Shown here: piece after piece, positions 639-63,766 of the stretch
How the letters are laid out: each line of letters opens with the position of its first letter
Numbering within the stretch: position 1 is the first letter of the stretch
Virus record (IMG/VR): IMGVR_UViG_3300034072_000926
Coordinates: 372,001 to 436,000 of that record
DNA length: 64,000 nucleotides
Direction: 5' to 3' (one strand)
The notes under the pieces: model-generated
Told to the model about the DNA's origin: nothing
Databases searched by the model: none
Seen by the model: the letters and a program-made list of their open reading frames with translations, nothing else
Position numbers and translations under genes: made by a program

Positions 639-697
639 TTTCGATCTCCGTTTATTGCCTACTCACCTGTTTTAACAGATTACTGGGTAGGGTCAAC
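639..697 (-). promoter_or_regulatory. repeated early promoter/RBS unit
   Basis: GTTGAC...TGTTAAAACAGGTGAG...GGAGATCGAAA-ATG. Confidence 0.8.
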
Positions 698-901
698 CAG
701 AATTTCACATTCTTTTGGCAAAACAAGGAATGTCTCTCCCTGATATTCGCCCTCGGTGATCCTTATGTAGAAATACCGCGTATCGTATTCTTCGCCATCC
801 CAGAAGTAGCCATCGAATACTGCATTGGCTTCGACTGCACCGGTCCAAGGAGTAGAAAACGTGGCGCGCAGTTTGTCGCCCTTTTTGAGTTCATTCTGCA
901 T
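680..901 (-). CDS. hypothetical protein
   Basis: GAGGAGG SD before MQNELKKGDK; start re-called from ORF track. Confidence 0.7.
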   Translation of the reverse strand: MQNELKKGDKLRATFSTPWTGAVEANAVFDGYFWDGEEYDTRYFYIRITEGEYQGETFLVLPKECEILVDPTQ

Positions 902-911
902 CACTGCCTCC

Positions 912-1100
912 TCAATATTCGACATGGAGTTCGACACTCTGCAGACTTCCCTTGATGTCATAGATGACATCAGTGACAGTGAAATATCCCTCAGGGGTTC
1001 TGATGCGTTCGCCGACACGAGGAACATGACAGCTCTGATACTGCGCGATTTCCGTCCAGCAGCTATACCGTTCCCGGTAGACAGTGATTGTCAGTTCCAT
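912..1100 (-). CDS. hypothetical protein
   Basis: ATG after AGGAGATCGAAC; MELTITVYRE... Confidence 0.75.
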   Translation of the reverse strand: MELTITVYRERYSCWTEIAQYQSCHVPRVGERIRTPEGYFTVTDVIYDIKGSLQSVELHVEY

Positions 1101-1156
1101 GTTCGATCTCCTGTTTCTGTTGTCCACAGTTTAGCAGGATAGGTGAACAAGTCAAC
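1101..1156 (-). promoter_or_regulatory. repeated early promoter/RBS unit
   Basis: GTTGACTTGTTCACCTATCCTGCTAAACT...AACAGGAGATCGAAC. Confidence 0.85.
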
Positions 1157-1160
1157 CAAT

Positions 1161-1191
1161 AAAAAAGGGAAGTGTTTCCACTTCCCTTTTT
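1161..1191. terminator. intrinsic terminator (possibly bidirectional)
   Basis: AAAAAAGGGAAGTG-TTTC-CACTTCCCTTTTT perfect stem with A/T tails. Confidence 0.85.
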
Positions 1192-1368
1192 GATCTTTCA
1201 TCAGCTTCACGGCATTATCCCGTCTTCAGCACCCTTATCCGAGCCGTGTTAACTTCCTTGAGTATGCAATGATATCATAACAACGGAACACTCAAGGTTT
1301 GCAGCTGATGCTTCCTAGCCCATGATCTGCGGACTACAAAAGGAGCCGGGGGCACCGAATCTGTTTCT
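1161..1368 (-). ncRNA. candidate structured small RNA (~200 nt)
   Basis: own TTGACT-N16-TAAGTT promoter (to 1398) and terminator; no ORF; nested stems CATCAGCT/AGCTGATG, CCTTGAGT/ACTCAAGG, CACGGC/GCCGTG. Confidence 0.6.
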
Positions 1369-1402: not shown

Positions 1403-1846
1403 TTATTTTGCGGATTTCAACAATTCCTCAAGGGAGATACGCTCCACAAACCGTGCGCTAGGCATGTGGAAGAGAATCTGGGTTTCGCCCTTCTTCGTCT
1501 TCTTGCCGTTGACCTCGTAGATGCTCAGAGCCATCGAATCATTTGCACGATCGGCCAAGACCTTCAAGTCCTCGATGGACTGTCTTGGGAACCATTCAAA
1601 GACCTGGGCCATTGATTCAAAACCGAAATACCATTCCCGGCGATCCCGATGAACCCATTCGTATGTGGCCTTCTTGCCCTTACCCTTGCCTTCCCACCAG
1701 TCCTTGAGCAGCGGATCCAGTTCCGGACCAACGTGAACAGTAGGAGGAACATCTCCGCGCTCGATAGCCGCTTCGCTGATCTTGAACCCAAAGCCCCGGC
1801 TGTAAATGCCTTCGTCCTTGTTGTTCTCGAACCGGAAAATGAGCAT
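1403..1846 (-). CDS. hypothetical phage protein
   Basis: 147-aa ORF after cassette SD. Confidence 0.8.
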   Translation of the reverse strand: MLIFRFENNKDEGIYSRGFGFKISEAAIERGDVPPTVHVGPELDPLLKDWWEGKGKGKKATYEWVHRDRREWYFGFESMAQVFEWFPRQSIEDLKVLADRANDSMALSIYEVNGKKTKKGETQILFHMPSARFVERISLEELLKSAK

Positions 1847-1901
1847 TTCGATCTCCTCTTGCTTACCTGTTCATTTTAGCAGAATAGGTGAGCAAATCAA
1901 C
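1847..1901 (-). promoter_or_regulatory. repeated early promoter/RBS unit
   Basis: TTGATT..CTCACCTATTCTGCTAAAAT...AGGAGATCGAA. Confidence 0.8.
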
Positions 1902-2214
1902 CGATCTTTTTCAGTTTCAGAGCATTGATCTTGTCGGCCTCGATGCAGCCGACCCTGATCGAGAAGACGTCACTGTTCTCATATACCGCCAAGGTGAGCG
2001 AGGCATCACCGTTAACCCAAAGCTCAGTTTCTGAGGGTTGGAATACTTCCTTGAGAGAAAAGCCGAACGTGGCGAGGATATTTGCGCGATCCTCCCACTT
2101 TGCTTGATTTGACGAGTAGCAGATCTTGTCGCCGGTCATAGGAAGCGACCACGCATTCCGGCCTATGTTGCTGAGCCCGTCAAATGCTTTGCGAAGCTTG
2201 GTCATGTTGGACAT
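1897..2214 (-). CDS. hypothetical protein
   Basis: ORF after cassette SD. Confidence 0.75.
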   Translation of the reverse strand: MSNMTKLRKAFDGLSNIGRNAWSLPMTGDKICYSSNQAKWEDRANILATFGFSLKEVFQPSETELWVNGDASLTLAVYENSDVFSIRVGCIEADKINALKLKKIG

Positions 2215-2268
2215 ATCGATCTCCTCTGTTTACCAAATCGGTGTAGCAGATATGGTGATAACGTCAAC
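2215..2268 (-). promoter_or_regulatory. repeated early promoter/RBS unit
   Basis: TTGACG..TCACC..TGCTACAC...AGGAGATCGAT. Confidence 0.75.
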
Positions 2269-2508
2269 CTATTTTGCACCAAATGGTCGAGGGAAACCGA
2301 GAATCTGCTCGATAGCAATGTCGAGGTATTTGCTTGCTTCGCGCAAGCTCATGTTCATCTTTGACAGGTCAGTTTCCGACGGAAGATGAATCTCAGGAAG
2401 ACCTACCTTATACGCGAGAAGCCGCGCAGCATCTTCATCAAGACCTTGAAACGCCCCGGCATCCTTATGCAGCTGGATTATGGCATTGGCCGTCTCTTGA
2501 ATGTTCAT
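2269..2508 (-). CDS. hypothetical protein
   Basis: TAATG coupling with upstream ORF; MNIQETANA... Confidence 0.7.
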   Translation of the reverse strand: MNIQETANAIIQLHKDAGAFQGLDEDAARLLAYKVGLPEIHLPSETDLSKMNMSLREASKYLDIAIEQILGFPRPFGAK

Positions 2509-2669
2509 TACTTGGACACCTTGTTGCAATTGCCGAACGGAGCGCAGTAGGGTTCGCCGTCATCGCCGGTTGCGTAGACAATTCCTTCAACGACCTCATC
2601 GACGAAAGCGGCGACGATCACACCGGGCTGAATCTCCATCAATACTTCGTCACCGACATAGAGCTGCAT
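2508..2669 (-). CDS. small hypothetical protein (53 aa, below ORF-track cutoff)
   Basis: MQLYVGDEVLMEIQPG...KVSK* after cassette SD. Confidence 0.75.
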   Translation of the reverse strand: MQLYVGDEVLMEIQPGVIVAAFVDEVVEGIVYATGDDGEPYCAPFGNCNKVSK

Positions 2670-2728
2670 GTTCGATCTCCTTTTGCTGCCTACTCACCTG
2701 TTTTAGCACAAGTAAGTAGGCAGTCAAC
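2670..2728 (-). promoter_or_regulatory. repeated early promoter/RBS unit
   Basis: TTGACT...TGCTAAAACAGGTGAGTAGGCAGCAAAAGGAGATCGAAC. Confidence 0.85.
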
Positions 2729-2733
2729 CTCTT

Positions 2734-3546
2734 TTAGGCGTCCAGCTTCTTTGCTGCAATGCGCTGGGACAGCTTATTGTCGACCTTGACCATAACGTCC
2801 TTGTAGGGTGCCATGATCCGCACTTCCTTGCCCTCAAATGTGGTCACCGACACGCCACCCGAAGGGAAGTAGCGCGAGACTGTTCCGAACGCAATACCGG
2901 CGCCCGTCATGCACTGGCTGCTGTATTCCTTGTGCGTGAACATCACAGTATCGCCGACCTCGACCGTCTGACCGAGTTGGTCGACGAACTTCTTGACATT
3001 CGCCATCACTGCTTCGCGTTCGGCCGCTGCCTGACCCTTTGCCTTCTTCGTGAACTTCAGTTCGGTTGGACCATCATAGTCGAGCAGGACAGTAAGGGCA
3101 GCATATCCGCCCAGTTTCTTGCTAACATCGGTGCCATCGTCGAGGATGAACCGATATTCCGGATTCTGGTAGCTGCTGGCTTCCAATTGACCGCCAATGC
3201 ACTGGCAGTCAACAACCATTTTCTTGTACGAATCCCACATCTGGTAGTGATGAATTACAGGAGTGTCGCAGTCGACCTTCTTGTATTGATTAACAAAGCC
3301 GCCCTTCTGGTCATCTTCGTTTGTCATTTCGCTGAATTCGAGACGTTTGCGCTTGAATGCAGCGAGATTGAATCGGATGATCGAACCATTTCGCGCCCCT
3401 CCGTCGATCCGAATTGCGAAGGGCTTCTCACCAAGCTGGTAGGGCTCCAGCTTCTTGATCATCTCCATCTGTATTTCTTTCGAAGCAAGCAGATCAACCC
3501 AGCGCCCGTCGAAGAAAGTCCGCAGTTCAATTTCGGTGTAGGTCAT
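2734..3546 (-). CDS. hypothetical protein with C-terminal KOW/SH3-like barrel; paralog of 29756..30556
   Basis: FVDQLGQTVEVGDTV...FGTVSRY resembles FFDRLDQEVNIGDLV...VGVVKGY. Confidence 0.75.
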   Translation of the reverse strand: MTYTEIELRTFFDGRWVDLLASKEIQMEMIKKLEPYQLGEKPFAIRIDGGARNGSIIRFNLAAFKRKRLEFSEMTNEDDQKGGFVNQYKKVDCDTPVIHHYQMWDSYKKMVVDCQCIGGQLEASSYQNPEYRFILDDGTDVSKKLGGYAALTVLLDYDGPTELKFTKKAKGQAAAEREAVMANVKKFVDQLGQTVEVGDTVMFTHKEYSSQCMTGAGIAFGTVSRYFPSGGVSVTTFEGKEVRIMAPYKDVMVKVDNKLSQRIAAKKLDA

Positions 3547-3628
3547 GTTTCGATCTCCGTATTGTTTGCTTCTGTTGTCCTCAACTTAGCAGAAATAGGT
3601 GAAGCGTCAACCGCTTATTCACCTATTT
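3547..3628 (-). promoter_or_regulatory. repeated early promoter/RBS unit with dyad AATAGGTGAA/TTCACCTATT around -35
   Basis: boxes flank GTTGAC in inverted orientation. Confidence 0.85.
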
Positions 3629-4145
3629 TGTGAAAATCCTTGACCTCCCCTGCGCGACGTTCCGCTGCGGTCGTCCGTCGCCAGCCCAGTTCCTTCATCT
3701 TCGCAGTCTGTTCCTTGCCGCGCAAGTAGGCAAACTGGTTCCGCTCCTTGTCGAGTTCCCGCTGACGCTCTACGGCGTTCTTGTGCGCGAGGCTGTCTGC
3801 GTCGTGAGCCATATTCAGCGTGGCCGAGAAGCTGTTCTCATAGGCTACTGCGCCGTAGTGCCAGTTGGTCGAGAAGGTGTGGCCATCGGGGTGCATCAGC
3901 TTGTCGCCGTAGTTGACGTGACTGCCGTCCGGCGTAATGCGGTCATGTTTGTCGACGGGGCGGAAACCCAACGCGATAGCGCGGTCGTGCATACGATGCA
4001 GCATATTGGAACCGCCGTGCCCGCCGCGCTTATAGAATCTCGCAGAAGCCGGATAGACCATCTTGCCCTCATGGAAATGAGCTTCCTGGAAATCGACGTT
4101 CTGGCCGCTTCCGAGGATCTTCTTTGCGAGCTTCTGAAATTCCAT
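3615..4145 (-). CDS. hypothetical protein
   Basis: 176-aa ORF after cassette SD. Confidence 0.8.
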   Translation of the reverse strand: MEFQKLAKKILGSGQNVDFQEAHFHEGKMVYPASARFYKRGGHGGSNMLHRMHDRAIALGFRPVDKHDRITPDGSHVNYGDKLMHPDGHTFSTNWHYGAVAYENSFSATLNMAHDADSLAHKNAVERQRELDKERNQFAYLRGKEQTAKMKELGWRRTTAAERRAGEVKDFHKIGE

Positions 4146-4204
4146 GTTCGATCTCCGTTTGCTGTCTACTCACCTGTTTTAACACAAACAGGTGAGCAAT
4201 CAAC
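4146..4204 (-). promoter_or_regulatory. repeated early promoter/RBS unit
   Basis: TTGATTGCTCACCTGTTT..TGTTAAAACAGGTGAG inverted repeat across -10. Confidence 0.85.
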
Positions 4205-4206
4205 CA

Positions 4207-4533
4207 CTAAATGATCATTCGGGCAATTTCTTCCAGCTTCTGCCGGTCGCGGGTGAAGGAGATCATATCGTAGCCGCGCTTGGGATCGGTCACCGCGTAG
4301 CAGGCCTTGGCTTGCATCTGCGACTTGGGAATCGATCCGATTTCGATCCAAGCAAGCGTTTCCTGATGCTGGACCTGGACGACCGCGAAGGACTGCTCCT
4401 CGTAGGCGTTACGGCGGATGACCATTCGCAGCTTGCGACCCTTGTAGGAGAAGTGCTGCTTCATATACCAGGATTGCGACTGGTTGTAAAAGTTGGCCTG
4501 GTCGAGTGCCTTGAACGAGGAACGTGCTACCAT
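4207..4533 (-). CDS. hypothetical protein
   Basis: MVARSSFK... start after GGAGATCGAAA. Confidence 0.8.
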   Translation of the reverse strand: MVARSSFKALDQANFYNQSQSWYMKQHFSYKGRKLRMVIRRNAYEEQSFAVVQVQHQETLAWIEIGSIPKSQMQAKACYAVTDPKRGYDMISFTRDRQKLEEIARMII

Positions 4534-4593
4534 TTTCGATCTCCATGTTTGCTTTGTTGTCCTCAACTTAGCAGAATAGGTGAAAGTGTCAAC
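4534..4593 (-). promoter_or_regulatory. repeated early promoter/RBS unit
   Basis: TTGACACTTTCACCTATTCTGCTAAGTT. Confidence 0.85.
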
Positions 4594-4597
4594 CAGT

Positions 4598-4690: not shown

Positions 4691-5273
4691 CCTCTGCCTC
4701 CCGTAGCACCACAACACGGATATATTTACCCGTCGGATGCGCCCCCTGGGTGTAGGTGCCCTCAATGACGCGGAAACCCAGCTGTTCCATGTCGTGTTCG
4801 TCGAGGCGGGAAACATTCTTCCACCCTGCGCGGATCATTTCCGACTTGATATCGGCGAGACGGTTTGCGATGAATACCTTACCATTTCGGTCAGCATATC
4901 GCACCGGCCAATCCTCGAGCGCTTTTTTGACGCCGGCGATGAGCTTGAGGGTGCGCTCATTTTCGTCGACGATTTCGCGAGCTTTCCGACCCATATTTCG
5001 GAAGGCATTCGGATTCTCGCGGAAGAAATCTGCGACCGCCTGATTTTCGGCGATGATTTTCTCGGTTTCGCGCTGCTGGTGCTTGGCGAACAATTCATTT
5101 GCCAATTCTAAGTTAACGGGCGTTAACCCATTTGGGTAGACGGCCTTGAACCGCTGGAGGAGGAATTCAGGGTTAACATTGTAAAAAGGAGCAACTTCGG
5201 CTGCGACCTCCTCCGGAGTGCCTCCCTTGCGGAGTTCCTGGATAAAGTCGTCGAACGCTTCTGCCTTGCTCAT
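4683..5273 (-). CDS. hypothetical protein
   Basis: MSKAEAFDDF... after AGGAGATCGAAG. Confidence 0.8.
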   Translation of the reverse strand: MSKAEAFDDFIQELRKGGTPEEVAAEVAPFYNVNPEFLLQRFKAVYPNGLTPVNLELANELFAKHQQRETEKIIAENQAVADFFRENPNAFRNMGRKAREIVDENERTLKLIAGVKKALEDWPVRYADRNGKVFIANRLADIKSEMIRAGWKNVSRLDEHDMEQLGFRVIEGTYTQGAHPTGKYIRVVVLREAEGE

Positions 5274-5334
5274 CTTCGATCTCCTGCGCTGCATTTCGTG
5301 TCACCACTTTAGCAGAACAGGAGACTGAGTCAAC
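5274..5334 (-). promoter_or_regulatory. repeated early promoter/RBS unit (near-identical to 14263..14323)
   Basis: shared GCTGCATTTCGTGTCACCACTTTAGCAGAACAGGAGA. Confidence 0.85.
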
Positions 5335-5545
5335 CAGTTTTCTGGTAGTCTGTGGATTTTCCATCCAGGATCTTGATCGTATCCCTATCTTGTAGGCCAC
5401 GATTGGCCATGGCGCTGACCTCGTCGGCTAGCCGACGTTCTGATCCGGGACCGTCCGGGACAAAGCGGCAATCAATGTTGCCGCTTCCGTTATTGAGGAT
5501 GACCCAAGTTCCATTGTCCTTGTCCATTAGTAGAACAATTCCCAA
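5330..5545 (-). CDS. hypothetical protein
   Basis: ORF coupled to upstream gene. Confidence 0.6.
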   Translation of the reverse strand: MGIVLLMDKDNGTWVILNNGSGNIDCRFVPDGPGSERRLADEVSAMANRGLQDRDTIKILDGKSTDYQKTG

Positions 5546-5922
5546 TCGCTAGCCAGTTCGGCATAGAAGGCCGCCTCAAAGCGCGCCATGTTGTTGGACA
5601 TGAAGGACGTCGACTGATTGGTGAACCGAGCCTTGTCGATTGCGGTCTTGACGATGAAGTTGTAGAGCCGGGTAACAGCTTCTTCCTCAGTCTCGGGCAG
5701 TTCTTCGCCGGCATGGCTGGCGCGCTTGTCTTCCCATCCCTGGATGCTTGCGAGGTAATAGCCGGCGACCTGCTTCTGTGCGGCCGCCTTCATGGCATCT
5801 TCGCCCCAGATGAAAGCGTGGACGGGATTCTGAGCCAGCTCTTCCTTGAACTTGTCGAGTTCACGATCGGCCTGTGCAACGATGCTCTCGAACTTCTTTT
5901 TGATCTGCTGCATGGTGGGCAT
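5527..5922 (-). CDS. hypothetical protein
   Basis: MPTMQQIKKKF... after cassette SD. Confidence 0.8.
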   Translation of the reverse strand: MPTMQQIKKKFESIVAQADRELDKFKEELAQNPVHAFIWGEDAMKAAAQKQVAGYYLASIQGWEDKRASHAGEELPETEEEAVTRLYNFIVKTAIDKARFTNQSTSFMSNNMARFEAAFYAELASDWELFY

Positions 5923-5982
5923 ATTCGATCTCCTGTTTGCTTCTGTTGTTCTCAACATAGCAGAACAGGAGATCATGTCAAC
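5923..5982 (-). promoter_or_regulatory. repeated early promoter/RBS unit; spacer is exact complement of SD
   Basis: TTGACATGATCTCCTGTTCTGCTATGTT...AACAGGAGATCGAAT. Confidence 0.85.
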
Positions 5983-5989
5983 CAGTTTC

Positions 5990-7465: not shown

Positions 7466-7794
7466 TAGGCGCTGACCGAGCCGGCGAGCAGCGAAGCGTT
7501 GGTTGCTTCGGTGAAGCGCGCCAGGGTGAACCAGCCATACTTGCCGGGGATCAGCGCAACCTTGGCGCCCGGTTCCGGCAGATGGTCAGCGATTGCGCTG
7601 GGCAGGCCGATCCGACGACCCGAACCCTTGACGCTCAGGTTCTTGAGCAGCTGGTCGTCCGAGAGGTTGGCATCGCTGGTGCGTTCGGTGAACCGGATCA
7701 TGACGCGACCTTCCTTGACGGTCACGCGAGCCTTGGTGTTCTGGCCGATCTTTTCCGACGTCGTAGCTGAATTGAAATTCACAGTCTTATACAT
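7465..7794 (-). CDS. 'KYGWF' paralog family protein 1
   Basis: RVTVKEGRVMIRFTER...GKYGWF shared with 48260 and 51082 ORFs; AAGGAGA SD. Confidence 0.8.
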   Translation of the reverse strand: MYKTVNFNSATTSEKIGQNTKARVTVKEGRVMIRFTERTSDANLSDDQLLKNLSVKGSGRRIGLPSAIADHLPEPGAKVALIPGKYGWFTLARFTEATNASLLAGSVSA

Positions 7795-7939
7795 GAGTAT
7801 CTCCTTGTTCTCTTCGGAGCACCATTGCCCCGCTTCATACTCTGAAACTAGCACCAGGTTTAGAACTGTCAACCAGGTTTTTCATATTAGGAAGTAAATC
7901 TATTAGAAAATGACCAGTATCGAGATAGGTTTGTTACTC

Positions 7940-8634: not shown

Positions 8635-8999
8635 CCCCTCACCGCCGCTGCATCGGCTTTTGCGGGATTGGCCTTTGCTTCTTCGGCCCAGCCAACATAG
8701 GCTTCGTAGACACGCACCACTAGCGCATCACATGCCTGCGTGAGGGTAAGCTGACGGGACTCGAAGCCGAGAACTTCCTGGACGAACATGCCGACCACTT
8801 CGTCCTTCATTGCCAACCAGGCATCAGAGGTGCGCGTCGTGTTCGGCGAAATCGTCTTTGCCAGTTCGTGTGCCGGCGTCGAGACCTGCTGAACCAGCAG
8901 AATTGCGAGACTGCCGAGACCACGGAATTCAGTTCCGCCGCGAACCAGCTGACGAACCGCATAGTCCTTGGCCCAAAGCCTTGCTTCGTTGATATCCAT
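8631..8999 (-). CDS. hypothetical protein
   Basis: after cassette SD. Confidence 0.8.
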   Translation of the reverse strand: MDINEARLWAKDYAVRQLVRGGTEFRGLGSLAILLVQQVSTPAHELAKTISPNTTRTSDAWLAMKDEVVGMFVQEVLGFESRQLTLTQACDALVVRVYEAYVGWAEEAKANPAKADAAAVRG

Positions 9000-9056
9000 G
9001 TTCGATCTCCTTATTGCCTATGTGCCTATTTTAGCACATAGGTGGATAGAGTCAAC
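9000..9056 (-). promoter_or_regulatory. repeated early promoter/RBS unit
   Basis: TTGACTCTATCCACCTATGTGCTAAAAT...AAGGAGATCGAAC. Confidence 0.85.
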
Positions 9057-10964
9057 CTAATATTTCCGGCCCCGCATACGAGAGTATTCCATCTTCCGCT
9101 GCTCTTGTTCAGCTTGTTCGCGATCCGCCATATATTTGCGGAGAACCGCCTTCGAGTCGGCCTTGACCTTCTCGGCCTTCATAGCTTCTGCACGTGCCTT
9201 TTCATCCGCTATGGCTTTTTTCCGAATCTTGTTGTTTAGATTAAGCAAAAACAGCTGGGCTTCGGTTTGAGTTTCGAACCGGTGCATTTCATCTTCGGTT
9301 CGGACTATGAATTGTCCGAGATTATTTTCTTTGTTGTAGCCGGACTTTGGACCCGCAATCTTCAACTGATTACAGATATCCTGGATAAGATCCTCGAATG
9401 ACTCGTAATCACAGAGGCCATAGACTTTGACCTTCCATTCATTGTTAATGAGCATGATCAACTCAATCTCATCCTGTCCACCAATGACTTGGTAAATGTC
9501 TTCATTGAGACTAAAATCGCTATAAACGATTTCCTGACAGAAGTGATTGACTTGGTCAAAGACATCCTGCCATGTTTCTCCTCTCAGACAAAGGATATTT
9601 GATTGAGCAGTCGGCTCATAGGCATCCTCGAGGTATCGTTCCTTCATCTTATTCATTTTGCGCTCATAGCGATCCTCGGCGAGAAACATATCTCGCAAGG
9701 ATTCTATGTCGTCATTCTCTTGTTCCTTATTCTCAAGAGGAACAATCTCAGCCTTCTTTGTTGGTGGTGCAAGCAAACTCTGTGCCACAACATCATCGGC
9801 CTGTAACTGGCGTAGATGACGCATTGAAGCGGGCATATAGTTCTCAGGCTTCGTCCACCATTCGGGCGCTGGCAATGCCTCGGCCAACGGTCCGTTAGGA
9901 TTGAGGAAGAATGCTTTGCCTTCGCTCATCCAGTAATGGTCGTTCATTTCCCGCTGCTGTTCAACAGTCCAGAAATTGTTCGAGACAGCCGGAGGACCCT
10001 CGGCTTCCAACTGACGAGCAACGCGCTGTTCGCTTGTCTGAATGAGGACCAGGTTCTTCTCGATAGCTTCCTGATTTGCTGCATAGTCGTTCAACTGGGC
10101 TTCGAGGCGCTGTTGCCTGATGGCTTCCCGATTGGCAATGATCCACCAAATTTTGCTCGCCGTGATCATGAGGCCGTCTCGACCCAAGTTGATATCCTGA
10201 TGGTGCTGGAAGACGGCGGGGAGACTTGCTTTCACTTCGTTTGCTGTCGGATAGAAGTTCCTCAGTTCATAGAACAGTTTCAAACCCTTTTCAGTCAACC
10301 ACCAACGTGGCGAACCCTTCTCCCAAGTGTGGCCATTCGATATAAGCCCTTGCTTGGTCAGGTTATCAATTATGGACTTGTGATATCCGCTTATGCCAAT
10401 TGAGTGAATCCTGTTCGGATTCAAGCATAGGTTGGGTTGCTTTGACTCTTGGATTCCTCGAACTGCACCCTCAATTTCATTGAGCTCGGCGACATTTATG
10501 GAATACTTCTCTGCCAGTTTGTCCTTGAAATCATAGACCTGACGATTAAACTCGGAAATGGTCAGACGTGCCGACTTACCAGTGCTTGCTGTGTAGCAGG
10601 TATGAAGATGGGCTTGGAGGTGCTGTCCCTTGTCAGTCAGGAAATAATATCCGAACTGTTCAAAGACGATATTCTTCCTCATGAGGGTTTTGATACCCTC
10701 ATGATGTTGATCTGGCCAAAGTGGATCAGGACGGTGCGCAAGCCTCATACCTGAGAATTGCTTGTGAGATGCGCCGGAACCGTCAGGATCGATAAGTGTG
10801 ATCTCTTCGGCCTGACGGATCATCATGCAGCTATACTGAGTGATACCTCGACCTTCAAGCGTCGCAACTGCCTTCGGGTATTTCATTCCTCGGATAAGAT
10901 CATGAAGTTCCATTGAGCTTTCCCGAAGGTCCCTTTCTAAGGCTTGTGCGGCTCCAAATATCAT
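9057..10964 (-). CDS. large hypothetical protein, possible winged-helix repeats
   Basis: 635 aa; two 'LT.KG' wing motifs (YFLTDKG, WWLTEKG); upstream TAAATA. Confidence 0.7.
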   Translation of the reverse strand: MIFGAAQALERDLRESSMELHDLIRGMKYPKAVATLEGRGITQYSCMMIRQAEEITLIDPDGSGASHKQFSGMRLAHRPDPLWPDQHHEGIKTLMRKNIVFEQFGYYFLTDKGQHLQAHLHTCYTASTGKSARLTISEFNRQVYDFKDKLAEKYSINVAELNEIEGAVRGIQESKQPNLCLNPNRIHSIGISGYHKSIIDNLTKQGLISNGHTWEKGSPRWWLTEKGLKLFYELRNFYPTANEVKASLPAVFQHHQDINLGRDGLMITASKIWWIIANREAIRQQRLEAQLNDYAANQEAIEKNLVLIQTSEQRVARQLEAEGPPAVSNNFWTVEQQREMNDHYWMSEGKAFFLNPNGPLAEALPAPEWWTKPENYMPASMRHLRQLQADDVVAQSLLAPPTKKAEIVPLENKEQENDDIESLRDMFLAEDRYERKMNKMKERYLEDAYEPTAQSNILCLRGETWQDVFDQVNHFCQEIVYSDFSLNEDIYQVIGGQDEIELIMLINNEWKVKVYGLCDYESFEDLIQDICNQLKIAGPKSGYNKENNLGQFIVRTEDEMHRFETQTEAQLFLLNLNNKIRKKAIADEKARAEAMKAEKVKADSKAVLRKYMADREQAEQEQRKMEYSRMRGRKY

Positions 10965-10994: not shown

Positions 10995-11657
10995 TCAAGC
11001 GAAGAACACAAGGTCCAAGCGCGGAACCAAATCTTCCTGTCCAATTCCACGAATGAGCTGTAGAACTTTGTCCTCGACACCCTTGTATTTGGCATGGAGA
11101 ACACTGACGACTTTCTCACCAGTTACAGGTGCCTCGGTGAGACGAACAATAGACGCCTCAGGAAACTCGCAGACGCCCGCTCGACATAGGCTCCATGCTG
11201 CACTAAGCAGGGCGCAAGTGTGTTCCTCATAGTTCTCATAGACGCTCTTAAGCCCTATACGACTACCGTCATCAGCAAGATAGCTGAGCACTCGCTTACC
11301 TTGTTTGCTGAACTTCTGCCAATCGAGTCTATCTTCTGGCAAGCTCGCAATAATCTGCTCAGCAACCGGCCCAAGTCGTCCCTCAAAGACAACATGATCG
11401 GGAGCAAGACCACGACGTAGGATGCAACGGATGAACTCGTTAACGTCCAGGGTATTCTGCTCGACATGCAGATCGTCAATGAGGATCGCGGCAACAACCA
11501 AGCTATCGGCGGTGCTCTCCCGATCCAGATATTCCTTCATGACAGTCAGAGATTCGTCCTGTTCATCAGAGAAGATGGAGTCAGCGTAGATGTGCGCAAA
11601 CTCAACAAACATCTCCGGGCGAGGGAGGTTAGGATTATCGGGAAGATGACTGCCCAC
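10995..11657 (-). CDS. HUP-fold-like protein resembling the SCO2522 family
   Basis: VEFAHIY, ILIDD, TCALLSAAW, SVL..KY..VE motifs (recalled similarity). Confidence 0.5.
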   Translation of the reverse strand: MGSHLPDNPNLPRPEMFVEFAHIYADSIFSDEQDESLTVMKEYLDRESTADSLVVAAILIDDLHVEQNTLDVNEFIRCILRRGLAPDHVVFEGRLGPVAEQIIASLPEDRLDWQKFSKQGKRVLSYLADDGSRIGLKSVYENYEEHTCALLSAAWSLCRAGVCEFPEASIVRLTEAPVTGEKVVSVLHAKYKGVEDKVLQLIRGIGQEDLVPRLDLVFFA

Positions 11658-11705
11658 TTAGATCTCCTGTTTCTTGTCCTCTCGATAACAGGAACGGTGA
11701 ACAAG

Positions 11706-12008
11706 TCAACCAGTTTGTTTGGATTGGCAAAACTCACGAATAAACTGAGACCAACGAAGCTTGAACAGCATTGCATCGTCCTTCGATTTTATCCAATAAG
11801 TTCGCCAAGGCTGATGGTGCCCTATGCCCAACCAAGTCCAGCTATGGTTGAGGTTTTCGGAACCCCAGGCAACGATTTCATCATGAAGACCACGACGATC
11901 ATCCTCATGCGAATATCGATTGGATCGGATGCTATAGGTCTTAATGAATTGGATCTTAAATCCAAACCATTGTTCGGTATCAGCTTGAGGAGGGCAAGGA
12001 CCAACCAT
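11706..12008 (-). CDS. 'DAMLFKL.W' family protein
   Basis: C-terminal WIKSKDDAMLFKLRW. Confidence 0.75.
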   Translation of the reverse strand: MVGPCPPQADTEQWFGFKIQFIKTYSIRSNRYSHEDDRRGLHDEIVAWGSENLNHSWTWLGIGHHQPWRTYWIKSKDDAMLFKLRWSQFIREFCQSKQTG

Positions 12009-12593: not shown

Positions 12594-12968
12594 TTACAGA
12601 GCGCCATGCTCCCATGCTTCGATTGCGGGCAGCGGCGAACCCCGACGATTGAATTCGGCCTTGTGAGCTTGCTGCTCGATCCGGGCCGCATTTTCGCGTT
12701 CCCATGCTTCGGCGGCGCGACGGTCCTGTTCGCTGTAATAATGCGACCAGTTGCGGTATTCGATACCGTCGCGCTCACTGTTGCGCTTGAGAAGGGCAGC
12801 TTCGCGCTCCTCTTCCTCCTTGAAGGCGGCTTCATAGTTGTTCATGAAGAACACTTGAGCCTCTGGCGTGCGCGGGCAGGCCGACCGAGTGCCGTAGAGT
12901 CCCTTGGCGAGGTCGGAAATGATGTCCTGGACTTCGTGGATGTTTTCCAGAGTGTAAACGTGCGTCAT
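12594..12968 (-). CDS. hypothetical protein
   Basis: after cassette SD. Confidence 0.8.
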   Translation of the reverse strand: MTHVYTLENIHEVQDIISDLAKGLYGTRSACPRTPEAQVFFMNNYEAAFKEEEEREAALLKRNSERDGIEYRNWSHYYSEQDRRAAEAWERENAARIEQQAHKAEFNRRGSPLPAIEAWEHGAL

Positions 12969-13028
12969 TTCCGATCTCCTCGTTGCTGCCTACTCACCTG
13001 TTTTAGCACTCTGGAAAACAAAGTCAAC
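12969..13028 (-). promoter_or_regulatory. repeated early promoter/RBS unit
   Basis: TGCTAAAACAGGTGAGTAGGCAGCAACGAGGAGATCGG. Confidence 0.85.
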
Positions 13029-13061
13029 CAGGTTTTTGCTGGTTGACGATTTTGTTGTCTG

Positions 13062-13434: not shown

Positions 13435-13878
13435 TCAGCGGCGAGGGGTGCGGATACCGGTGAAATAACCAGTGGAAACCTTGCAATTCTGGTAGGGTTG
13501 CGATGGACGATGGTATCCGAGGTCAGTTGCCTCACGCGCATCATAGTAGGACCGGCGCTCTGACCACCCTTCACGGGCTTCCGCGATTGCATCGACCTTA
13601 CTGGCGAGACGTCTCGATTCTCCATTGGTCAGTCGACCATCCCTCATTGCAAAGCTGACCTCGCGGCGGAGAATTTTGCAGTTCTCCATGATGAACGCAA
13701 CGTCTTCGTAATCGCGCGGCGGCGCTTCCTCGTCGGATGGTCCGCGAGTCATTGCCCATTCTGCAGCTTTGTTTCGTTGTTCCTTCGAACCGAATGAATG
13801 TGCCCGATTGGTGTTTCCTCCTCCACAAGCCACAAGGCCGACCGAGAGGGCCATAGCGAGGATAATGTGATTCTTCAT
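13435..13878 (-). CDS. putative lipoprotein
   Basis: signal peptide with LVAC lipobox; AGGAGATCGA SD. Confidence 0.75.
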   Translation of the reverse strand: MKNHIILAMALSVGLVACGGGNTNRAHSFGSKEQRNKAAEWAMTRGPSDEEAPPRDYEDVAFIMENCKILRREVSFAMRDGRLTNGESRRLASKVDAIAEAREGWSERRSYYDAREATDLGYHRPSQPYQNCKVSTGYFTGIRTPRR

Positions 13879-13890
13879 TGATCGATCTCC

Positions 13891-14262: not shown

Positions 14263-14323
14263 ACTCGATCTCCTTTGCTGCATTTCGTGTCACCACTTTA
14301 GCAGAACAGGAGATCAAGTCAAC
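14263..14323 (-). promoter_or_regulatory. repeated early promoter/RBS unit
   Basis: TTGACTTGATCTCCTGTTCTGCTAAAGT...AAGGAGATCGAG. Confidence 0.85.
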
Positions 14324-14329
14324 CACTTT

Positions 14330-26340: not shown

Positions 26341-26343
26341 CGA

Positions 26344-50641: not shown

Positions 50642-50953
50642 TTAACGGACAGCGACCTCCTTCACCTCATATTCGATGTCATAGACGTTGTCGTAGCCGA
50701 CCTCTTCGAAATAGCCGCCATCGAGTTTCAGGATCTTCTTTATCCAGTCTATCCAGTTCGTCTGGTTCAGAACCGAGTTCTTCTCGACACTGTCGTAGCG
50801 AGCATCGTAGGCATGTCGTGCTGCCTTGACTTCTTCGTTGGCCGAAAACGCCCAGGACTTTGCGAGCATTTCGTCATCCGTCACAAACGGATACGATAGT
50901 TCTTCACCGCCGCTGTAATCACCATGGTCGAGTTTGCGAATTACGAGGAACAT
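50642..50953 (-). CDS. hypothetical protein
   Basis: after cassette unit 50954-51008. Confidence 0.8.
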   Translation of the reverse strand: MFLVIRKLDHGDYSGGEELSYPFVTDDEMLAKSWAFSANEEVKAARHAYDARYDSVEKNSVLNQTNWIDWIKKILKLDGGYFEEVGYDNVYDIEYEVKEVAVR

Positions 50954-51081
50954 TGTCGATCTCCTGTTTCTGTTAACCTGGTTATAAGCGGTTCAGATTA
51001 GGAGTCAAGAGGAGATTGACTAGATATGATTACGGCACCGACCGAAGCCAGCGCCGTAATAGATTCGGGAAGAATCGCTGT

Positions 51082-60682: not shown

Positions 60683-60999
60683 CTCTCATAACAACGGGGA
60701 GGGCTTTGCAGCACCTCCCCGTCGGTAGCCCGCTTACTAGACAACTTGGGAACCAGGTCGGGTCGCTACAACCAGATCCTTTAGCCGTCTTTCCACACCG
60801 TCCGCCACGCACACCGTAAAGCCCTGTATGCCCCGCGAAATGTGCCCACCTTCCCTAGAAGGAAAGGCTCTCCCTCAGCAAACTACAGCCTGCAGAGTAG
60901 TGGAATTCGTAGAAAAAGCAAGACGTTTACGCCTATGCAACAAAATTTTTCTAGGTTAGTCAAGTCTTTAACCTAATATCATTATATTCAATGCAGTAG

Positions 61000-61299
61000 T
61001 TACATGAATGTGATGCGAATATAATGAGTAAAGTTTGCACAATGCTTGGATTCGTCGACTACGGGCCCGTAGATGGCCTCCAAGTAGGCAAAATTATAGG
61101 TCTGGTGCGCGTCCTTAACCGTTGACATTGTGAGCTCTCGAAGCTGCTGGCGATCCAGTTCAGGGTCGACTAACATGCGGAAAACTCGCTGTCCGTTATG
61201 GTTGGTGAAATTCGCGACTTTGACATAAACGCCCAGTTCGTTCGAGACGACCTGAGCGTATGTGTAATCAGCGGGGTAATCACGACAATCTAAGTGCAT
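61000..61299 (-). CDS. hypothetical protein
   Basis: GAGG SD; upstream ATAAGTA. Confidence 0.65.
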   Translation of the reverse strand: MHLDCRDYPADYTYAQVVSNELGVYVKVANFTNHNGQRVFRMLVDPELDRQQLRELTMSTVKDAHQTYNFAYLEAIYGPVVDESKHCANFTHYIRITFM

Positions 61300-61350
61300 A
61301 ATGAACCTCTAAGTAGGAAGGCTACTTCCTACTTATCAGTTGTTCAGCCC

Positions 61351-61839
61351 TCAGGATGCAAGGATCATAGCCTGGTAGCGGCCAGAGAAATCGTCCCAGC
61401 TCTTCATGCCGGTCGGGTTGAAGCTGATCCGCTGGAATGCAAGCAAGTGGCGCATCACTGCAACGGGAATCACGACCTCGAGGATCTTCCGCAAACCTTC
61501 CTCGGTCATCGTGTCCATATAATTGCGGTCTGCGAACATCTTGCGACATTCCTCAAAAGCTTCCTTGGACTTGTAGTCGCCGGTGAAGTTCTCCATCGAG
61601 TAGCGCAGAAGGGTATCAATTTTCGGATTCATGACCTCCTGATACTGCGGATTCAGGTGGGTCGGACCATCCGACTTGTCCTTCATGAGCGTGTGGAAAG
61701 CGATCACATCCTGCTGGAGACGGACCATAGTCGCATACTTGTTCAGACCGGCGGCCTTGGCAGCACCTTCAAGTGCGCCCATCGCTGCGCCGGCGATTGC
61801 AGCTTTGAAAATGTTCTTCAGAATTTCACGGCGGTTCAT
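61351..61839 (-). CDS. hypothetical protein with twin-arginine-like N-terminus
   Basis: MNRREILK; cassette unit 61840-61898. Confidence 0.75.
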   Translation of the reverse strand: MNRREILKNIFKAAIAGAAMGALEGAAKAAGLNKYATMVRLQQDVIAFHTLMKDKSDGPTHLNPQYQEVMNPKIDTLLRYSMENFTGDYKSKEAFEECRKMFADRNYMDTMTEEGLRKILEVVIPVAVMRHLLAFQRISFNPTGMKSWDDFSGRYQAMILAS

Positions 61840-61930
61840 GTTCGATCTCCTGTTTGTCTCTATGCCATATTCATAGCATCAAACAGGAGACACGCAACCT
61901 CTTTTTCACCTTTGTTGAAAGAAAGGTGAC

Positions 61931-63472
61931 TTATACGGCGTAACGAACCTCCGCTTCCCAGTTGCCAATACGCACACCGCCCTTCTTCACCTTGCTCATC
62001 TCATACGTTGCGAGAATGTCCTCGATAACCCCGTAGCGGGTGTTCAGAGCTCCGTCGATGAAGATCTCCTTATCGAGTTGCTTATTGACCAACTGCTGGA
62101 AGAGGACGTTCCCAGCAAGTCCATTCTTGATCTTCGGTTCCATCTCCTGGAACTTCTTGTGGTCAATACCCAGGTAGTCCCGAACCATAATGTTGATCGT
62201 GGAAACGACCTGCAAGGTGTGTTCGCGGCTGCAAAGACCACAGATCTTTGTGGTCTTGATGTTGAATACGTGACCACAATCCTCGTCTTCACAACGCTTC
62301 CAAACATTGGTGCGCTTCTCGTAGCTCTTAGCCGACAGTTCGCGTTCCTCACGTTCGAGGAGCAGACCCTTTGCAGCACGGGGCCATTCAATTGCTTCGA
62401 CCGGACCATGCTCCTTGATGTTGCCGGCAAAATCGAAAACATAGCCGAAACGCTCGCCTTCACACTTGCGGAGGACACGACCTACCATCTGCTGGTAAAA
62501 CGCAATGCTGCCGACCTTGCGGGTCAGGAAGCAGAACTTGGCCAGCTTCTCGTCAAAGCCTTCACACAGAGCGTTAACGCTGATCAGCACCTGCGTGATG
62601 CCCTCATGGAAACGCTTGAAGATGTCTTCCCGAACCACCGGGCTCTGACCCTGAACATAATCGACATCGCCAACATTGCCCTTGCCTGCCGTTACGACTT
62701 CGCACTTAATGCCCAGTGCAAGGAACTGCGCTTCCAGTTGCTTGGAGTGGTTCGTATCATCGGTAAACACGATAGTGCGCTTGTTCTCATGCGAGGCAGT
62801 TGCGAGCAGCCATGTCTTGCCAACATGGTCATCAGCGAGGCTGAGCTCTTCATATACGGGCTTCTTCAAGTCGCCTCGTTCGATGAGTTCGCTCATCGTT
62901 GCTGCAACGATCATCCGATCCCCATACCATTCTGCAAGGCTTTCGCCGGGCTTATCAGTGCCATCCCGATACGGAGTAGCGGTGAAGCCGACGACCTTAG
63001 CGTTGGGCCAGCGGTTGCGGATTGCTTGGAACTCCGACGAGGTTGCCTTGTGGGCTTCATCGAAGATGATCATTGTGGGTTCGAAGCTGGGATCGAAGTA
63101 GAGGTCGTTGGACAGACCGAGGGTGTTGGTCAACGTCTTCGGAAGCGTAACGAGCAAGTTACGCTTATAGTCGCATACCAGCTTGTGGGAAGCCTTGCCG
63201 ACCAAGTAGGTCTTGATCGAATCATGCAGGGCGCTCGACATAATCTGGAAGCCATGCTGCATGGTTGCAATCGTCTGTCCCAGGAGAACCTGCAAGTTAA
63301 CGATTGCAAGAACCCGACCGCCCCGCTTGATTTCCTCAGCCGCTACGTCTCCCATCACGACCGTCTTGCCGTATCCCGTAGGAGCAACGACAAGAACAGA
63401 AGGCTGTTGCTGCAAAATGTTAAACACTTGCGTTGTTACGTTGCGCTGTTCTTCACGAGGCTTGATGACCAT
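61931..63472 (-). CDS. SF2 DEAH-box helicase with C-terminal Zn ribbon
   Basis: APTGYGKT, DEAH, GFTATP, EGFD, QMVGRVLR, C....C..CGLC. Confidence 0.9.
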   Translation of the reverse strand: MVIKPREEQRNVTTQVFNILQQQPSVLVVAPTGYGKTVVMGDVAAEEIKRGGRVLAIVNLQVLLGQTIATMQHGFQIMSSALHDSIKTYLVGKASHKLVCDYKRNLLVTLPKTLTNTLGLSNDLYFDPSFEPTMIIFDEAHKATSSEFQAIRNRWPNAKVVGFTATPYRDGTDKPGESLAEWYGDRMIVAATMSELIERGDLKKPVYEELSLADDHVGKTWLLATASHENKRTIVFTDDTNHSKQLEAQFLALGIKCEVVTAGKGNVGDVDYVQGQSPVVREDIFKRFHEGITQVLISVNALCEGFDEKLAKFCFLTRKVGSIAFYQQMVGRVLRKCEGERFGYVFDFAGNIKEHGPVEAIEWPRAAKGLLLEREERELSAKSYEKRTNVWKRCEDEDCGHVFNIKTTKICGLCSREHTLQVVSTINIMVRDYLGIDHKKFQEMEPKIKNGLAGNVLFQQLVNKQLDKEIFIDGALNTRYGVIEDILATYEMSKVKKGGVRIGNWEAEVRYAV

Positions 63473-63766
63473 TTACATTCCCCAGTTAATTTACCGATCT
63501 CTTGTCCATTCTTATACATAGGTGGAACAAGCGAGTCAACCAGGTATTTCACCTTTTCTCGATCTAGTTGCTAGGTCGGTACGCCCTCCTCCTTACCGAC
63601 ACCGAGGTCCACGCTATTCACGCTTCTGCCCTCTGAAATCCAGCTCAGTGCTACTTGTCGGCCGCCGTTCACACCTCTGCTCTAGCATTGGTGAGCGTAT
63701 GGTGAATACAAAGGTGTGTCAACTCTAGATATGGGAATGGGCCGAAATTTCTTCCGGCCCAAAATC

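What the first reader, a model, noticed from the sequence alone, without database searches (positions are those of the whole stretch)
639..63540. Genome-wide 'gene cassette' system: more than 35 copies of one ~60-bp promoter+leader+SD unit
Seen: nearly every minus-strand mini-operon starts with (G)GTTGAC-N2-4-TC(A/T)CCT(A/G)TT-N-TGCTA(A/T)NNT-N~25-(A)GGAGATCGA-N1-3-ATG. The core CGATCTCC occurs on the + strand about 33 times, e.g. near 642, 1104, 1849, 2217, 2673, 3551, 4149, 4537, 5277, 5926, 9003, 12972, 14266, 17515, 18211, 18979, 20242, 20835, 21757, 23057, 24197, 25024, 26290, 29222, 45078, 50957, 61843. The unit usually begins within a few bases of the previous gene's stop, so unrelated 1-4-gene modules sit head-to-tail between repeats. 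The invariant ATCGA after GGAG is more than an SD needs. Inference: a standardised expression and recombination module that lets the phage shuffle or acquire accessory genes (analogous to PeSL repeats of T4-like phages or integron cassettes), possibly read by a dedicated phage factor.
Basis: partly seen in the sequence, partly recalled or inferred. Interest (0 to 1): 0.82.

Follow-up and report, generated by a model that had tools for sequence, protein, structure and literature searches.

The report
Repeated early promoter cassettes in jumbo phage
A 465-kb T4-type phage of rhizobia puts the same ~60-base promoter, hairpin and ribosome-site unit in front of dozens of small unknown early genes, as the known PeSL elements of T4-like phages do, and close relatives show genes gained or lost by recombination between these units.

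Summary
The repeat is real. The window holds 25 strict complete units (0 expected by chance) and 32 promoter cores (0.42 expected), all on the minus strand. It is regional, not genome-wide: about 80 units in the 465-kb genome, most of them within about 50 kb.

Each unit has an A-rich stretch holding the upstream stop codon, then GGTTGAC-N14-TG(C/T)TA. That is a sigma-70 -35 box plus an extended -10 box of the Sinorhizobium type. A 20-28 nt leader, GGAGATCGA and ATG follow.

New here: in about 60% of units the promoter spacer is complementary to the leader or to the ribosome site itself. The hairpin encloses the -10 box and the predicted start, so only read-through RNA can form it.

The phage has a T4-type capsid and portal. 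Its closest cultured relative is Sinorhizobium phage Phosso, and related jumbo phages carry the same units.

Every sequence-level feature that defines PeSL elements is met. Chimeric units at cassette indels, one against this window and two in 90-97% identical relatives, show unit-to-unit homologous recombination. Crossover points vary and no integrase is present, so the system is not integron-like.

The ATCGA extension varies between lineages and remains unexplained.

Verdict: a new member of a known kind.

The parts
636..698 (-). complete unit (GG-TTGAC at 696, GGAGATCGA 641-649, ATG 638)
1098..1157 (-). complete unit; preceded by an intrinsic terminator at 1191-1162
1844..1902 (-). complete unit (TTGAT variant); fold z -3.0
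2212..2269 (-). complete unit; no significant hairpin (z 0.2)
2667..2729 (-). complete unit; 16-bp stem encloses the -10 box, z -7.4
3544..3612 (-). complete unit; a second stem (AGGTGAA/TTCACCT) brackets the -35 box
4143..4205 (-). complete unit; 11-bp stem CTCACCTGTTT/AAACAGGTGAG encloses the -10 box, z -4.0. This unit and gene 4207-4533 are absent from relative G001
4531..4594 (-). complete unit; 91% identical to the G001 unit that sits directly on the orthologue of gene 3615-4145 (recombination junction in GGAGATCGAA-ATGG)
5271..5335 (-). complete unit; the spacer pairs with the ribosome site, z -4.3; orthologous unit 91% conserved in G001
5920..5983 (-). complete unit; spacer GATCTCCTGTT pairs with AACAGGAGATC (ribosome site), z -6.5
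7792..7874 (-). promoter core only (weak, score 15.7), 78 nt from the ATG
8997..9057 (-). complete unit, z -5.2
11655..11711 (-). unit with GGAGATCT and a GTG start
12966..13029 (-). complete unit (GGAGATCGG); no significant hairpin
14260..14324 (-). complete unit; the spacer pairs with the ribosome site, z -6.9; near-copy of unit 5333
17508..17571 (-). complete unit (TTGAT), z -3.4
18205..18264 (-). complete unit, z -5.1; TTGACTCC pairs with GGAG(A)TCGA
18973..19038 (-). complete unit, TTTATCGGAA leader type
19423..19486 (-). unit with a degenerate -35 box (TTGCAT) and GGAGATCGG
20236..20296 (-). complete unit
20829..20887 (-). complete unit, GTG start
21094..21153 (-). complete unit
21751..21814 (-). 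complete unit; the 5' half matches the orthologous G001 unit but the leader is of another type (mosaic)
23051..23109 (-). complete unit; the spacer pairs with the ribosome site, z -4.5
24191..24249 (-). complete unit
24568..24699 (-). promoter core with a GGAGAC ribosome site and a more distant start codon
25018..25075 (-). degenerate unit (TTGATATC...TATATGG) with GGAGATCGA
26284..26341 (-). complete unit in front of the FtsK-like gene
29216..29279 (-). complete unit; the spacer pairs with leader and ribosome site, z -5.8
29643..29705 (-). degenerate unit (TTGCAC) with GGAGATCGA
45072..45131 (-). complete unit
61837..61899 (-). unit with a degenerate -35 box (TTGCGT) and GGAGATCGA; orthologous unit kept in G001
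13876..13890 (-). GGAGATCGA ribosome site of an internal gene, no promoter
29417..29429 (-). GGAGATCGA followed by ATG inside called gene 29283-29645; no promoter and no gene call at this ATG
47666..47678 (-). GGAGATCGA ribosome site without a promoter
48626..48640 (-). GGAGATCGA ribosome site without a promoter
50951..51015 (-). GGAGATCGA ribosome site behind a variant promoter (CTTGACT-N17-TATAAC)

Best explanation
The units are PeSL-type elements ('promoter-early stem-loop'). Each is a compact block placed in front of a small accessory early gene in the plastic arm of a T4-superfamily jumbo phage of Rhizobiaceae.

Shown from sequence:
- An A-rich stretch holds the upstream gene's stop codon.
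- A near-consensus host sigma-70 promoter follows: GGTTGAC, a 16-bp spacer, and an extended -10 box TG(C/T)TAnnn.
- A 20-28 nt A/C-rich leader, the ribosome site GGAGATCGA and the ATG complete the unit.
- In about 60% of units an inverted repeat pairs the promoter spacer with the leader or with the ribosome site.

Inferred:
1. Host RNA polymerase fires all units immediately after infection.
2. A transcript that starts at a unit's own promoter begins inside the loop. It lacks the 5' arm and carries an open ribosome site.
3. RNA reading through from upstream forms the hairpin. This attenuates it and/or masks the ribosome site, so each cassette is insulated from its neighbours. T4 uses the same trick at genes e, soc, 49 and I-TevI.

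Shown by comparison:
4. The conserved ends of the units (the -35 segment and the ribosome-site-to-ATG segment) serve as short homologies. The phage's general recombination system, which includes a UvsX/RecA-like protein, deletes, inserts, duplicates and reorders cassettes through them.

The near-invariance of ATCGA in this lineage is best read as concerted evolution of a recombining repeat family plus selection for efficient initiation, not as a separate recognition site.
For: Counts far above chance.

Anatomy and fixed distances. The promoter fits the S. meliloti sigma-70 consensus CTTGAC-N17-CTATAT (PMC2873474).

Phage identity: T4-type capsid and portal. The closest cultured relative is Sinorhizobium phage Phosso, with 88.5% identity in the major capsid protein.

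The same units occur in related genomes: 40 in G001, 22 in G002, 11 in G004, 10 in Phosso, 0 in Atu_ph07.

Hairpins:
- 12 of 20 window units fold with z <= -2.6.
- A unit's own arms pair better than arms swapped between units (-11.8 against -9.4 kcal/mol; none of 2000 permutations reached the observed value).
- Arm sequences differ between lineages yet stay complementary.
- Predicted ribosome-site accessibility is 0.25 in read-through RNA against 0.53 in the unit's own transcript (p 8e-7). Controls give 0.31 against 0.45.

Downstream genes: all 10 tested have no Pfam family and only unknown-function PHROGs.

Recombination:
- The G001 unit in front of the orthologue of gene 3615-4145 is 91% identical to window unit 4592. 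It switches to the gene 3615-4145 sequence inside GGAGATCGAA-ATGG, and gene 4207-4533 plus unit 4203 are missing.
- In 90-97% identical relatives there are two clean unit-to-unit chimeras at 368-nt and 980-nt cassette indels, and a tandem duplication that ends at a unit's ATG.
- 10 of 24 indel boundaries lie in units, against 6.2% of all sequence (p 7e-7).
- Cassette order is swapped between the window and G001.
- A UvsX/RecA-like gene is present.

The PeSL definition and the crossover zones match PMC2839356 and PMC4122927. The T4 precedent for masking a ribosome site only in read-through RNA is in PMC3014915.
Against: There are no transcription start data. Promoter activity and hairpin function are predictions.

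Eight of 20 units have no significant hairpin. Hairpin energy shows no strand bias, so an RNA role cannot be told from a DNA role. No U-tract follows the stems, and intrinsic terminators are not enriched.

Between the window and G001, synteny breaks are not enriched at junctions with units (odds ratio 1.5, p 0.57). Gene turnover is equal in the unit-poor half.

Against non-coding sequence only, the boundary enrichment in close relatives is marginal (p 0.07).

Relatives at about 93% identity (runs X4 and X6) are collinear over window 600-4980, apart from two diverged same-length segments. The roughly 99% relative (X3) is covered only by short contigs that stop at the units and shows no rearrangement. 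Another 9-kb pair with 5 units is also collinear.
Confidence: 0.72

Rival explanations
1. The units are only expression signals. Each early gene keeps a near-consensus host promoter and a strong ribosome site under selection. The resemblance between copies is convergence on a consensus, and recombination at them is incidental and has no importance.
For: The best-conserved positions are the ones that matter for sigma-70 binding and initiation. Synteny breaks are not enriched at units between the window and G001. Turnover is equal without units. Close relatives are collinear over several kb. An indel between two plain ribosome-site/start repeats also occurs without any promoter unit (event 9).
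Against: Non-consensus leader types of about 20 nt are shared by many units and by three genomes. Units are more conserved (83-91%) than the genes around them (67-78%). Orthologous units are rarely each other's best match (2 of 16). Three clean chimeric units lie exactly at cassette indels.
Confidence: 0.18
2. This is an integron-like, site-specific cassette system: a dedicated recombinase recognises the hairpin, as an integron integrase recognises attC, and excises or inserts cassettes.
For: The stems vary in sequence but are conserved as structures, like attC. Cassettes lie head to tail.
Against: No tyrosine recombinase is present in the genome. Every cassette has its own promoter. Crossovers fall at different places: the -35 segment, the spacer, and the ribosome-site-to-ATG segment. 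About 40% of units have no stem.
Confidence: 0.03
3. The palindromes over the -10 box are operators for a phage repressor that shuts off early transcription.
For: In several units the inverted repeat is centred on TG(C/T)TA, for example unit 4203. In T4, early promoters are shut off by a mechanism that is not fully understood (PMC3014915).
Against: Arm sequences and register differ between units and lineages, with no common half-site. In a third of units the 3' arm is the ribosome site, far from the -10 box.
Confidence: 0.07
4. The extended ribosome site GGAGATCGA is the recognition site of a dedicated phage RNA-binding protein or nuclease that co-ordinately silences early messages. This would be analogous to T4 RegB, which with ribosomal protein S1 needs an 11-nt motif around GGAG.
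For: After GGAG, ATCGA follows in 41 of 64 unit genes and in 14 of 230 other GGAG genes, where about 0.2 would be expected. The motif is kept in G001 and Phosso. The T4 precedent is in PMC3014915.
Against: No RegB homologue was found. Only 8 of 34 G003 units keep ATCGA. Concerted evolution of a recombining repeat explains the invariance without a reader.
Confidence: 0.1

Closest known systems
PeSL (promoter-early stem-loop) elements of T4-like phages RB49/phi1, T4/PST and KVP40/nt-1 (Arbiol 2010, PMC2839356; Comeau 2014, PMC4122927)
   Same: Upstream stop codon in an A/T-rich stretch; sigma-70-type -35 and -10 boxes; a stem-loop between or over the boxes that tolerates G-T pairs; ribosome site and ATG at the 3' end. 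About 50-80 copies cluster in plastic regions in front of genes of unknown function. Indels between relatives have crossovers inside the element. The host phage is of the T4 type.
   Different: The phage lineage is distant (465-kb rhizobial jumbo phages related to Phosso and Atu_ph07). The promoter follows the alphaproteobacterial consensus. The stems are not G-run/C-run and carry no terminator tail. In a third of units the 3' arm is the ribosome site itself. The ribosome site is extended to GGAGATCGA. Promoter activity, terminator activity and mini-circles are untested here.
Transcript-specific masking of the ribosome site at T4 genes e, soc, 49 and I-TevI (review PMC3014915)
   Same: A promoter lies inside the DNA that encodes a hairpin. 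Long read-through RNA buries the ribosome site, and the promoter's own RNA lacks the 5' arm.
   Different: In T4 these are a few late promoters that delay expression. Here it would apply to dozens of early promoters within one array, and it is only predicted.
Integron gene cassettes with attC sites
   Same: Head-to-tail cassettes of unrelated small genes separated by structured repeats.
   Different: No integrase, own promoter on every cassette, variable crossover points.
T4 RegB/S1 target sites (GGAG plus a 3' context in early ribosome sites)
   Same: An extended motif shared by the ribosome sites of early genes.
   Different: No RegB homologue. The 3' context is ATCGA rather than A-rich. The motif is lineage-variable.

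Membership tests
PeSL elements of T4-type phages | Sigma-70-type -35 and -10 promoter consensus | tested here: met
   GGTTGAC-N14-TG(C/T)TA: 32 in the window against 0.42 expected; matrix; fits the S. meliloti consensus
PeSL elements of T4-type phages | Upstream gene's stop codon in an A/T-rich stretch just 5' of the -35 box | tested here: met
   A at 60-72% at positions -9 to -5; stop to TTGAC is -16 to +35 nt in 25 of 31 window units
PeSL elements of T4-type phages | Stable stem-loop between or overlapping the promoter boxes | tested here: met
   12 of 20 units have z <= -2.6; own arms pair better than swapped arms (0 of 2000 permutations reached the observed value); absent or weak in about 40% of units
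PeSL elements of T4-type phages | Ribosome site and start codon at the 3' end of the element | tested here: met
   GGAGATCG 15-34 nt after the -10 box in 25 units; ATG 1-4 nt after GGAGATCGA
PeSL elements of T4-type phages | Tens of copies clustered in plastic regions of a T4-type genome, in front of genes of unknown function | tested here: met
   About 80 per genome, more than 50 within 50 kb; Gp23 and Gp20 families present; 10 of 10 downstream genes have no Pfam family; 45 of 127 window genes lack a G001 orthologue
PeSL elements of T4-type phages | Indels or replacements between relatives with crossovers inside the elements | tested here: met
   Chimeric units (events 2 and 11) and a duplication (event 4). 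The statistics are only suggestive against non-coding DNA (p 0.07) and null at 70% identity
PeSL elements of T4-type phages | Measured promoter and terminator/attenuator activity | not testable with these tools
   Needs reporter assays or 5'/3'-end mapping
PeSL elements of T4-type phages | Excised mini-circles | not testable with these tools
   The runs are held as contigs only. Joints at units have sides under 31 nt and reflect cross-mapping of other unit copies
Integron cassette arrays | Tyrosine integrase encoded with the array | tested here: not met
   PF00589 has no match in the 465-kb genome
Integron cassette arrays | Promoterless cassettes read from one common promoter; crossover at one fixed site | tested here: not met
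   Each unit carries its own promoter; crossovers fall at the -35 segment, the spacer or the ribosome-site-to-ATG segment
T4 RegB target sites | RegB endoribonuclease encoded by the phage | tested here: not met
   PF10715 has no match even at E <= 1
Transcript-specific ribosome-site masking (T4 e, soc, 49, I-TevI) | The promoter lies inside the hairpin-coding DNA, so its own transcript lacks the 5' arm while read-through RNA pairs the ribosome site | tested here: inconclusive
   The predicted geometry fits in about a third to two thirds of units. Accessibility is 0.25 against 0.53, only modestly beyond controls (p 0.015 and 0.04). No start-site data

The most novel reading that the evidence does not exclude
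The promoter spacer doubles as an anti-ribosome-site sequence, and the invariant GGAGATCGA is a shared handle. Each of about 60 early cassettes would then be translated only from its own promoter's transcript. The whole early set could be switched off together by one phage factor, unrelated to RegB, that reads the extended site. This would be a built-in insulation and shut-off code for a shuffling gene array.
Probability: 0.12. Interest if true: 0.6.

Novelty: new member of a known kind. Interest (0 to 1): 0.4.

Why it matters
PeSL elements were described in T4-like phages of enterobacteria, Vibrio and Aeromonas. Finding the same design in 420-480-kb rhizobial jumbo phages suggests it is a general way for T4-type phages to hold and exchange accessory early genes. 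Here the design has a promoter tuned to alphaproteobacterial sigma-70 and direct traces of unit-to-unit recombination.

It gives a ready map of about 80 probable early promoters and early genes for this clade. The genome paper on a cultured member that I searched (AP-J-162, PMC11242549) mentions no promoters, repeats or motifs.

Sinorhizobium phage Phosso, which carries the units, offers a system for testing whether a hairpin that spans a promoter insulates neighbouring cassettes.

Tried and rejected
- Megablast and blastn of the window against the phage collection found nothing. Relatives were reached through the unit pattern instead.
- A generic E. coli-type promoter and terminator scan picks up only 8 units and shows no enrichment, because the last T of the -10 box is not conserved.
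- A fixed-register covariation test of the hairpin gave no clear signal, because the stems sit in different registers. A contiguous-stem test against chimeras was weak except in G003.
- Comparing sense and antisense fold energy does not separate an RNA role from a DNA role.
- Extended pairing of GGAGATCGA with the 16S 3' tail gains only about 0.6 kcal/mol over plain GGAG, in a register that pairs GAUC with GAUC. This is not a convincing explanation.
- GATC and TCGA are neither enriched nor avoided genome-wide, so a methylation or restriction reading of ATCGA has no support.
- Joints and loose ends at units in the laid runs are other unit copies cross-mapping onto the 5.4-kb reference. Two checked by eye correspond to units 21812 and 14322. 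They are not recombinants.
- The record behind L164 could not be searched further.
- Rfam has no match in the window.

Full report
**Observation**

Reading the minus strand shows the composite directly.

The promoter core TTGAY-N14-TGYTA occurs 32 times against 0.42 expected. The full composite, with GGAGATCG 15-34 nt downstream, occurs 25 times against 0 expected. All are on the minus strand.

I built a position-weight matrix from 42 seed copies and scanned with its promoter part alone. It finds 80 sites at score 12 or more in the whole genome, against 2 in a shuffled genome, and 74 are on the minus strand.

The distance from TTGAC to ATG is 53-64 nt. The upstream stop codon usually lies within about 35 nt of TTGAC.

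The window is bases 372,001-436,000 of a 465,259-bp IMG/VR virus record. The units are concentrated between 352 and 401 kb, with a second, thinner group at 438-465 and 0-30 kb. The repeat is therefore regional, not genome-wide. The window holds 25-27 complete units rather than more than 35.

**Anatomy**

The matrix shows these parts in order:
- an A-rich stretch at -9 to -5 before TTGAC;
- GG, then TTGAC;
- a pyrimidine-rich 14-nt stretch with consensus TCACCT(A/G)TTC;
- TG(C/T)TA, followed by weakly conserved positions.

This is a sigma-70 promoter with an extended -10 box and a 16-bp spacer. It fits the Sinorhizobium meliloti consensus CTTGAC-N17-CTATAT (PMC2873474). An E. coli-style scan misses most copies because the last T of the -10 box is not kept.

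The leader is A/C-rich and ends in (A)CAGGAGATCGA(A)nATG.

After GGAG, the five bases ATCGA follow in 41 of 64 unit genes. They also follow in 14 of 230 other genes with a GGAG site, where about 0.2 would be expected. About half of those 14 sit behind decayed promoters.

The promoter spacer is complementary to the start of the leader or to the ribosome site of the same unit. Unit 4203 pairs CTCACCTGTTT with AAACAGGTGAG. Units 5333, 5981, 14322, 23107 and 29277 pair GATCTCCTGTT-like spacers with AACAGGAGATC.

- Twelve of 20 window units fold with z of -2.6 or lower against dinucleotide shuffles.
- A unit's own arms pair better than arms swapped between units: -11.8 against -9.4 kcal/mol, and none of 2000 permutations reached the observed value.
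- Arm sequences differ between lineages but stay complementary. G002 and Phosso use TTCCTATGTT with AACATAGGAA. G004 uses CTGGT with ACCAG.
- The register varies between units, and there is no strand bias in fold energy.

The -10 box and the predicted start lie in the loop, so only read-through RNA or single-stranded DNA can form the stem. Predicted accessibility of the ribosome site is 0.25 in the read-through context against 0.53 in the unit's own transcript (p 8e-7). Other genes give 0.31 against 0.45.

**What the phage is**

The genome has a T4-type major capsid protein (Gp23 family, E 1e-80), a T4-type portal (E 3e-104), a large terminase and a UvsX/RecA-like gene. It has no 16S gene, no match to sigma-70 region 2, no RegB and no tyrosine integrase.

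The closest cultured phages are Sinorhizobium phage Phosso (469 kb, 88.5% identity in the capsid protein) and Agrobacterium phage Atu_ph07 (72%).

The unit pattern occurs 40 times in G001, 22 in G002, 11 in G004, 10 in Phosso and 0 in Atu_ph07.

Ten unit-driven genes have no Pfam family and only unknown-function PHROGs.

**Comparison with the known kind**

PeSL elements are defined by the following features (PMC2839356 and PMC4122927):
- an upstream stop codon in an A/T-rich stretch;
- sigma-70-like boxes;
- a stem-loop between or over the boxes;
- a ribosome site and an ATG;
- about 50 copies in plastic regions in front of orphan genes;
- crossovers between the -10 box and the ATG.

All sequence-level features are met here. 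The papers on related rhizobial phages that I searched report no such elements.

**Recombination**

G001 is collinear with the window at 67-80% nucleotide and 62% protein identity. At that distance the test is saturated:
- Breaks are not enriched at junctions with units (odds ratio 1.5, p 0.57).
- Turnover is the same in the unit-poor half: 23 of 40 chain steps are broken in the unit-rich part against 19 of 36 in the unit-poor part.

Even so, 16 of 22 orthologous genes keep a unit, but only 2 of those 16 units are each other's best match. Leader types are shared across three genomes.

One junction is clean. The G001 unit in front of the orthologue of gene 3615-4145 is 91% identical to window unit 4592. 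It switches to the gene 3615-4145 sequence inside GGAGATCGAA-ATGG. Gene 4207-4533 and unit 4203 are absent from G001.

Neighbouring cassettes are also swapped in order: genes 8/9, 53/54 and 56/57 in the numbering.

Runs holding relatives at about 93% identity (X4 and X6) are collinear over window 600-4980, apart from two diverged same-length segments. The roughly 99% relative (X3) is covered only by short contigs that stop at the units. The joints reported at units are cross-mapping.

Among loci fetched with the unit pattern, pairs at 90-97% identity gave 12 indel events:
- Event 2 is a 368-nt cassette indel. The shorter allele joins the 5' flank and -35 segment of one unit to the rest of the next unit, with a 15-nt overlap.
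- Event 11 is a 980-nt indel between two units, found in two contigs of one metagenome.
- Event 4 is a tandem duplication that ends at a unit's ATG.
- Event 9 is a deletion between two plain ribosome-site/start repeats.

Ten of 24 boundaries lie in units. That compares with 6.2% of all sequence (p 7e-7) and 26% of non-coding sequence (p 0.07).

Crossover points vary. This fits general homologous recombination on short homologies, not a site-specific enzyme.

**The ATCGA puzzle**

- ATCGA is kept in 40 of 62 G000 units and 36 of 60 G001 units, but in only 8 of 34 G003 units.
- GATC and TCGA are at expected frequency genome-wide.
- TTGA of the -35 box can pair with TCGA of the extension and closes some predicted folds. 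Both are near-invariant, so covariation cannot test this.

I read the invariance as concerted evolution of a recombining repeat family. A dedicated reader is not excluded.

**Verdict**

The integron and dedicated-factor readings are not.

Nothing about transcription or translation has been measured. Those steps are inferred from sequence and from the T4 precedents (PMC3014915).

Noticed in passing
window 1160-1400, minus strand: A 240-nt gene-free stretch with its own promoter-like site and a strong intrinsic terminator (1191-1162). It folds with z -3.4, has no Rfam match, and the same interval aligns with G001. It is a candidate phage small RNA.
   Followed up: partly
whole genome G000: GTAC is strongly avoided (observed/expected 0.12), while all other 4-base palindromes lie at 0.8-1.04. 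This suggests pressure from a GTAC-cutting restriction system.
   Followed up: no
window 3612-3640, 19038-19060, 21814-21840: Some units carry a second stem that brackets the -35 box (AGGTGAA, 8 nt, TTGACG, then TTCACCT). This corresponds to the PeSL subclass with the stem over the -35 box.
   Followed up: partly
window 14330-16039, 25081-26286, 28025-29032, 40031-41710, 46104-47375, 54303-56402: Auxiliary genes in this arm: a cytidylyltransferase-like protein, an FtsK/SpoIIIE-like ATPase, an NAD synthase, a class I lysyl-tRNA synthetase, a radical SAM protein and a two-domain AAA ATPase.
   Followed up: no
L055:11560-12220 against L234:2940-3020: In relatives at about 90-94% identity, a 577-nt indel is bounded by a 15-17-nt direct repeat. 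The repeat is the ribosome site plus start of two genes on the other strand (GGAAGCATAATGG). Conserved start regions without a promoter therefore also act as recombination points.
   Followed up: partly
runs X4 and X6, laid on window 600-6000: Two DNA runs labelled as single organisms, not metagenomes, hold a relative at about 93% identity at 6-30x word depth. This may be a phage-carrying culture and a clue to the host.
   Followed up: no
window 707-907 and 1962-2051: In the roughly 93% relatives, two segments of unchanged length are diverged beyond 85% identity. One covers almost exactly gene 680-901, between unit 696 and the next gene boundary. This looks like allele replacement at the scale of a single gene.
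   Followed up: no
genome G000 2.9-18 kb: Promoter-core matches (TTGAC-N14/15-TG(C/T)TA) lie next to tRNA-like sequence, for example near 5.8 and 7.9 kb. The tRNA cluster may be driven by the same early promoter type. No tRNA scan of that region was run.
   Followed up: no
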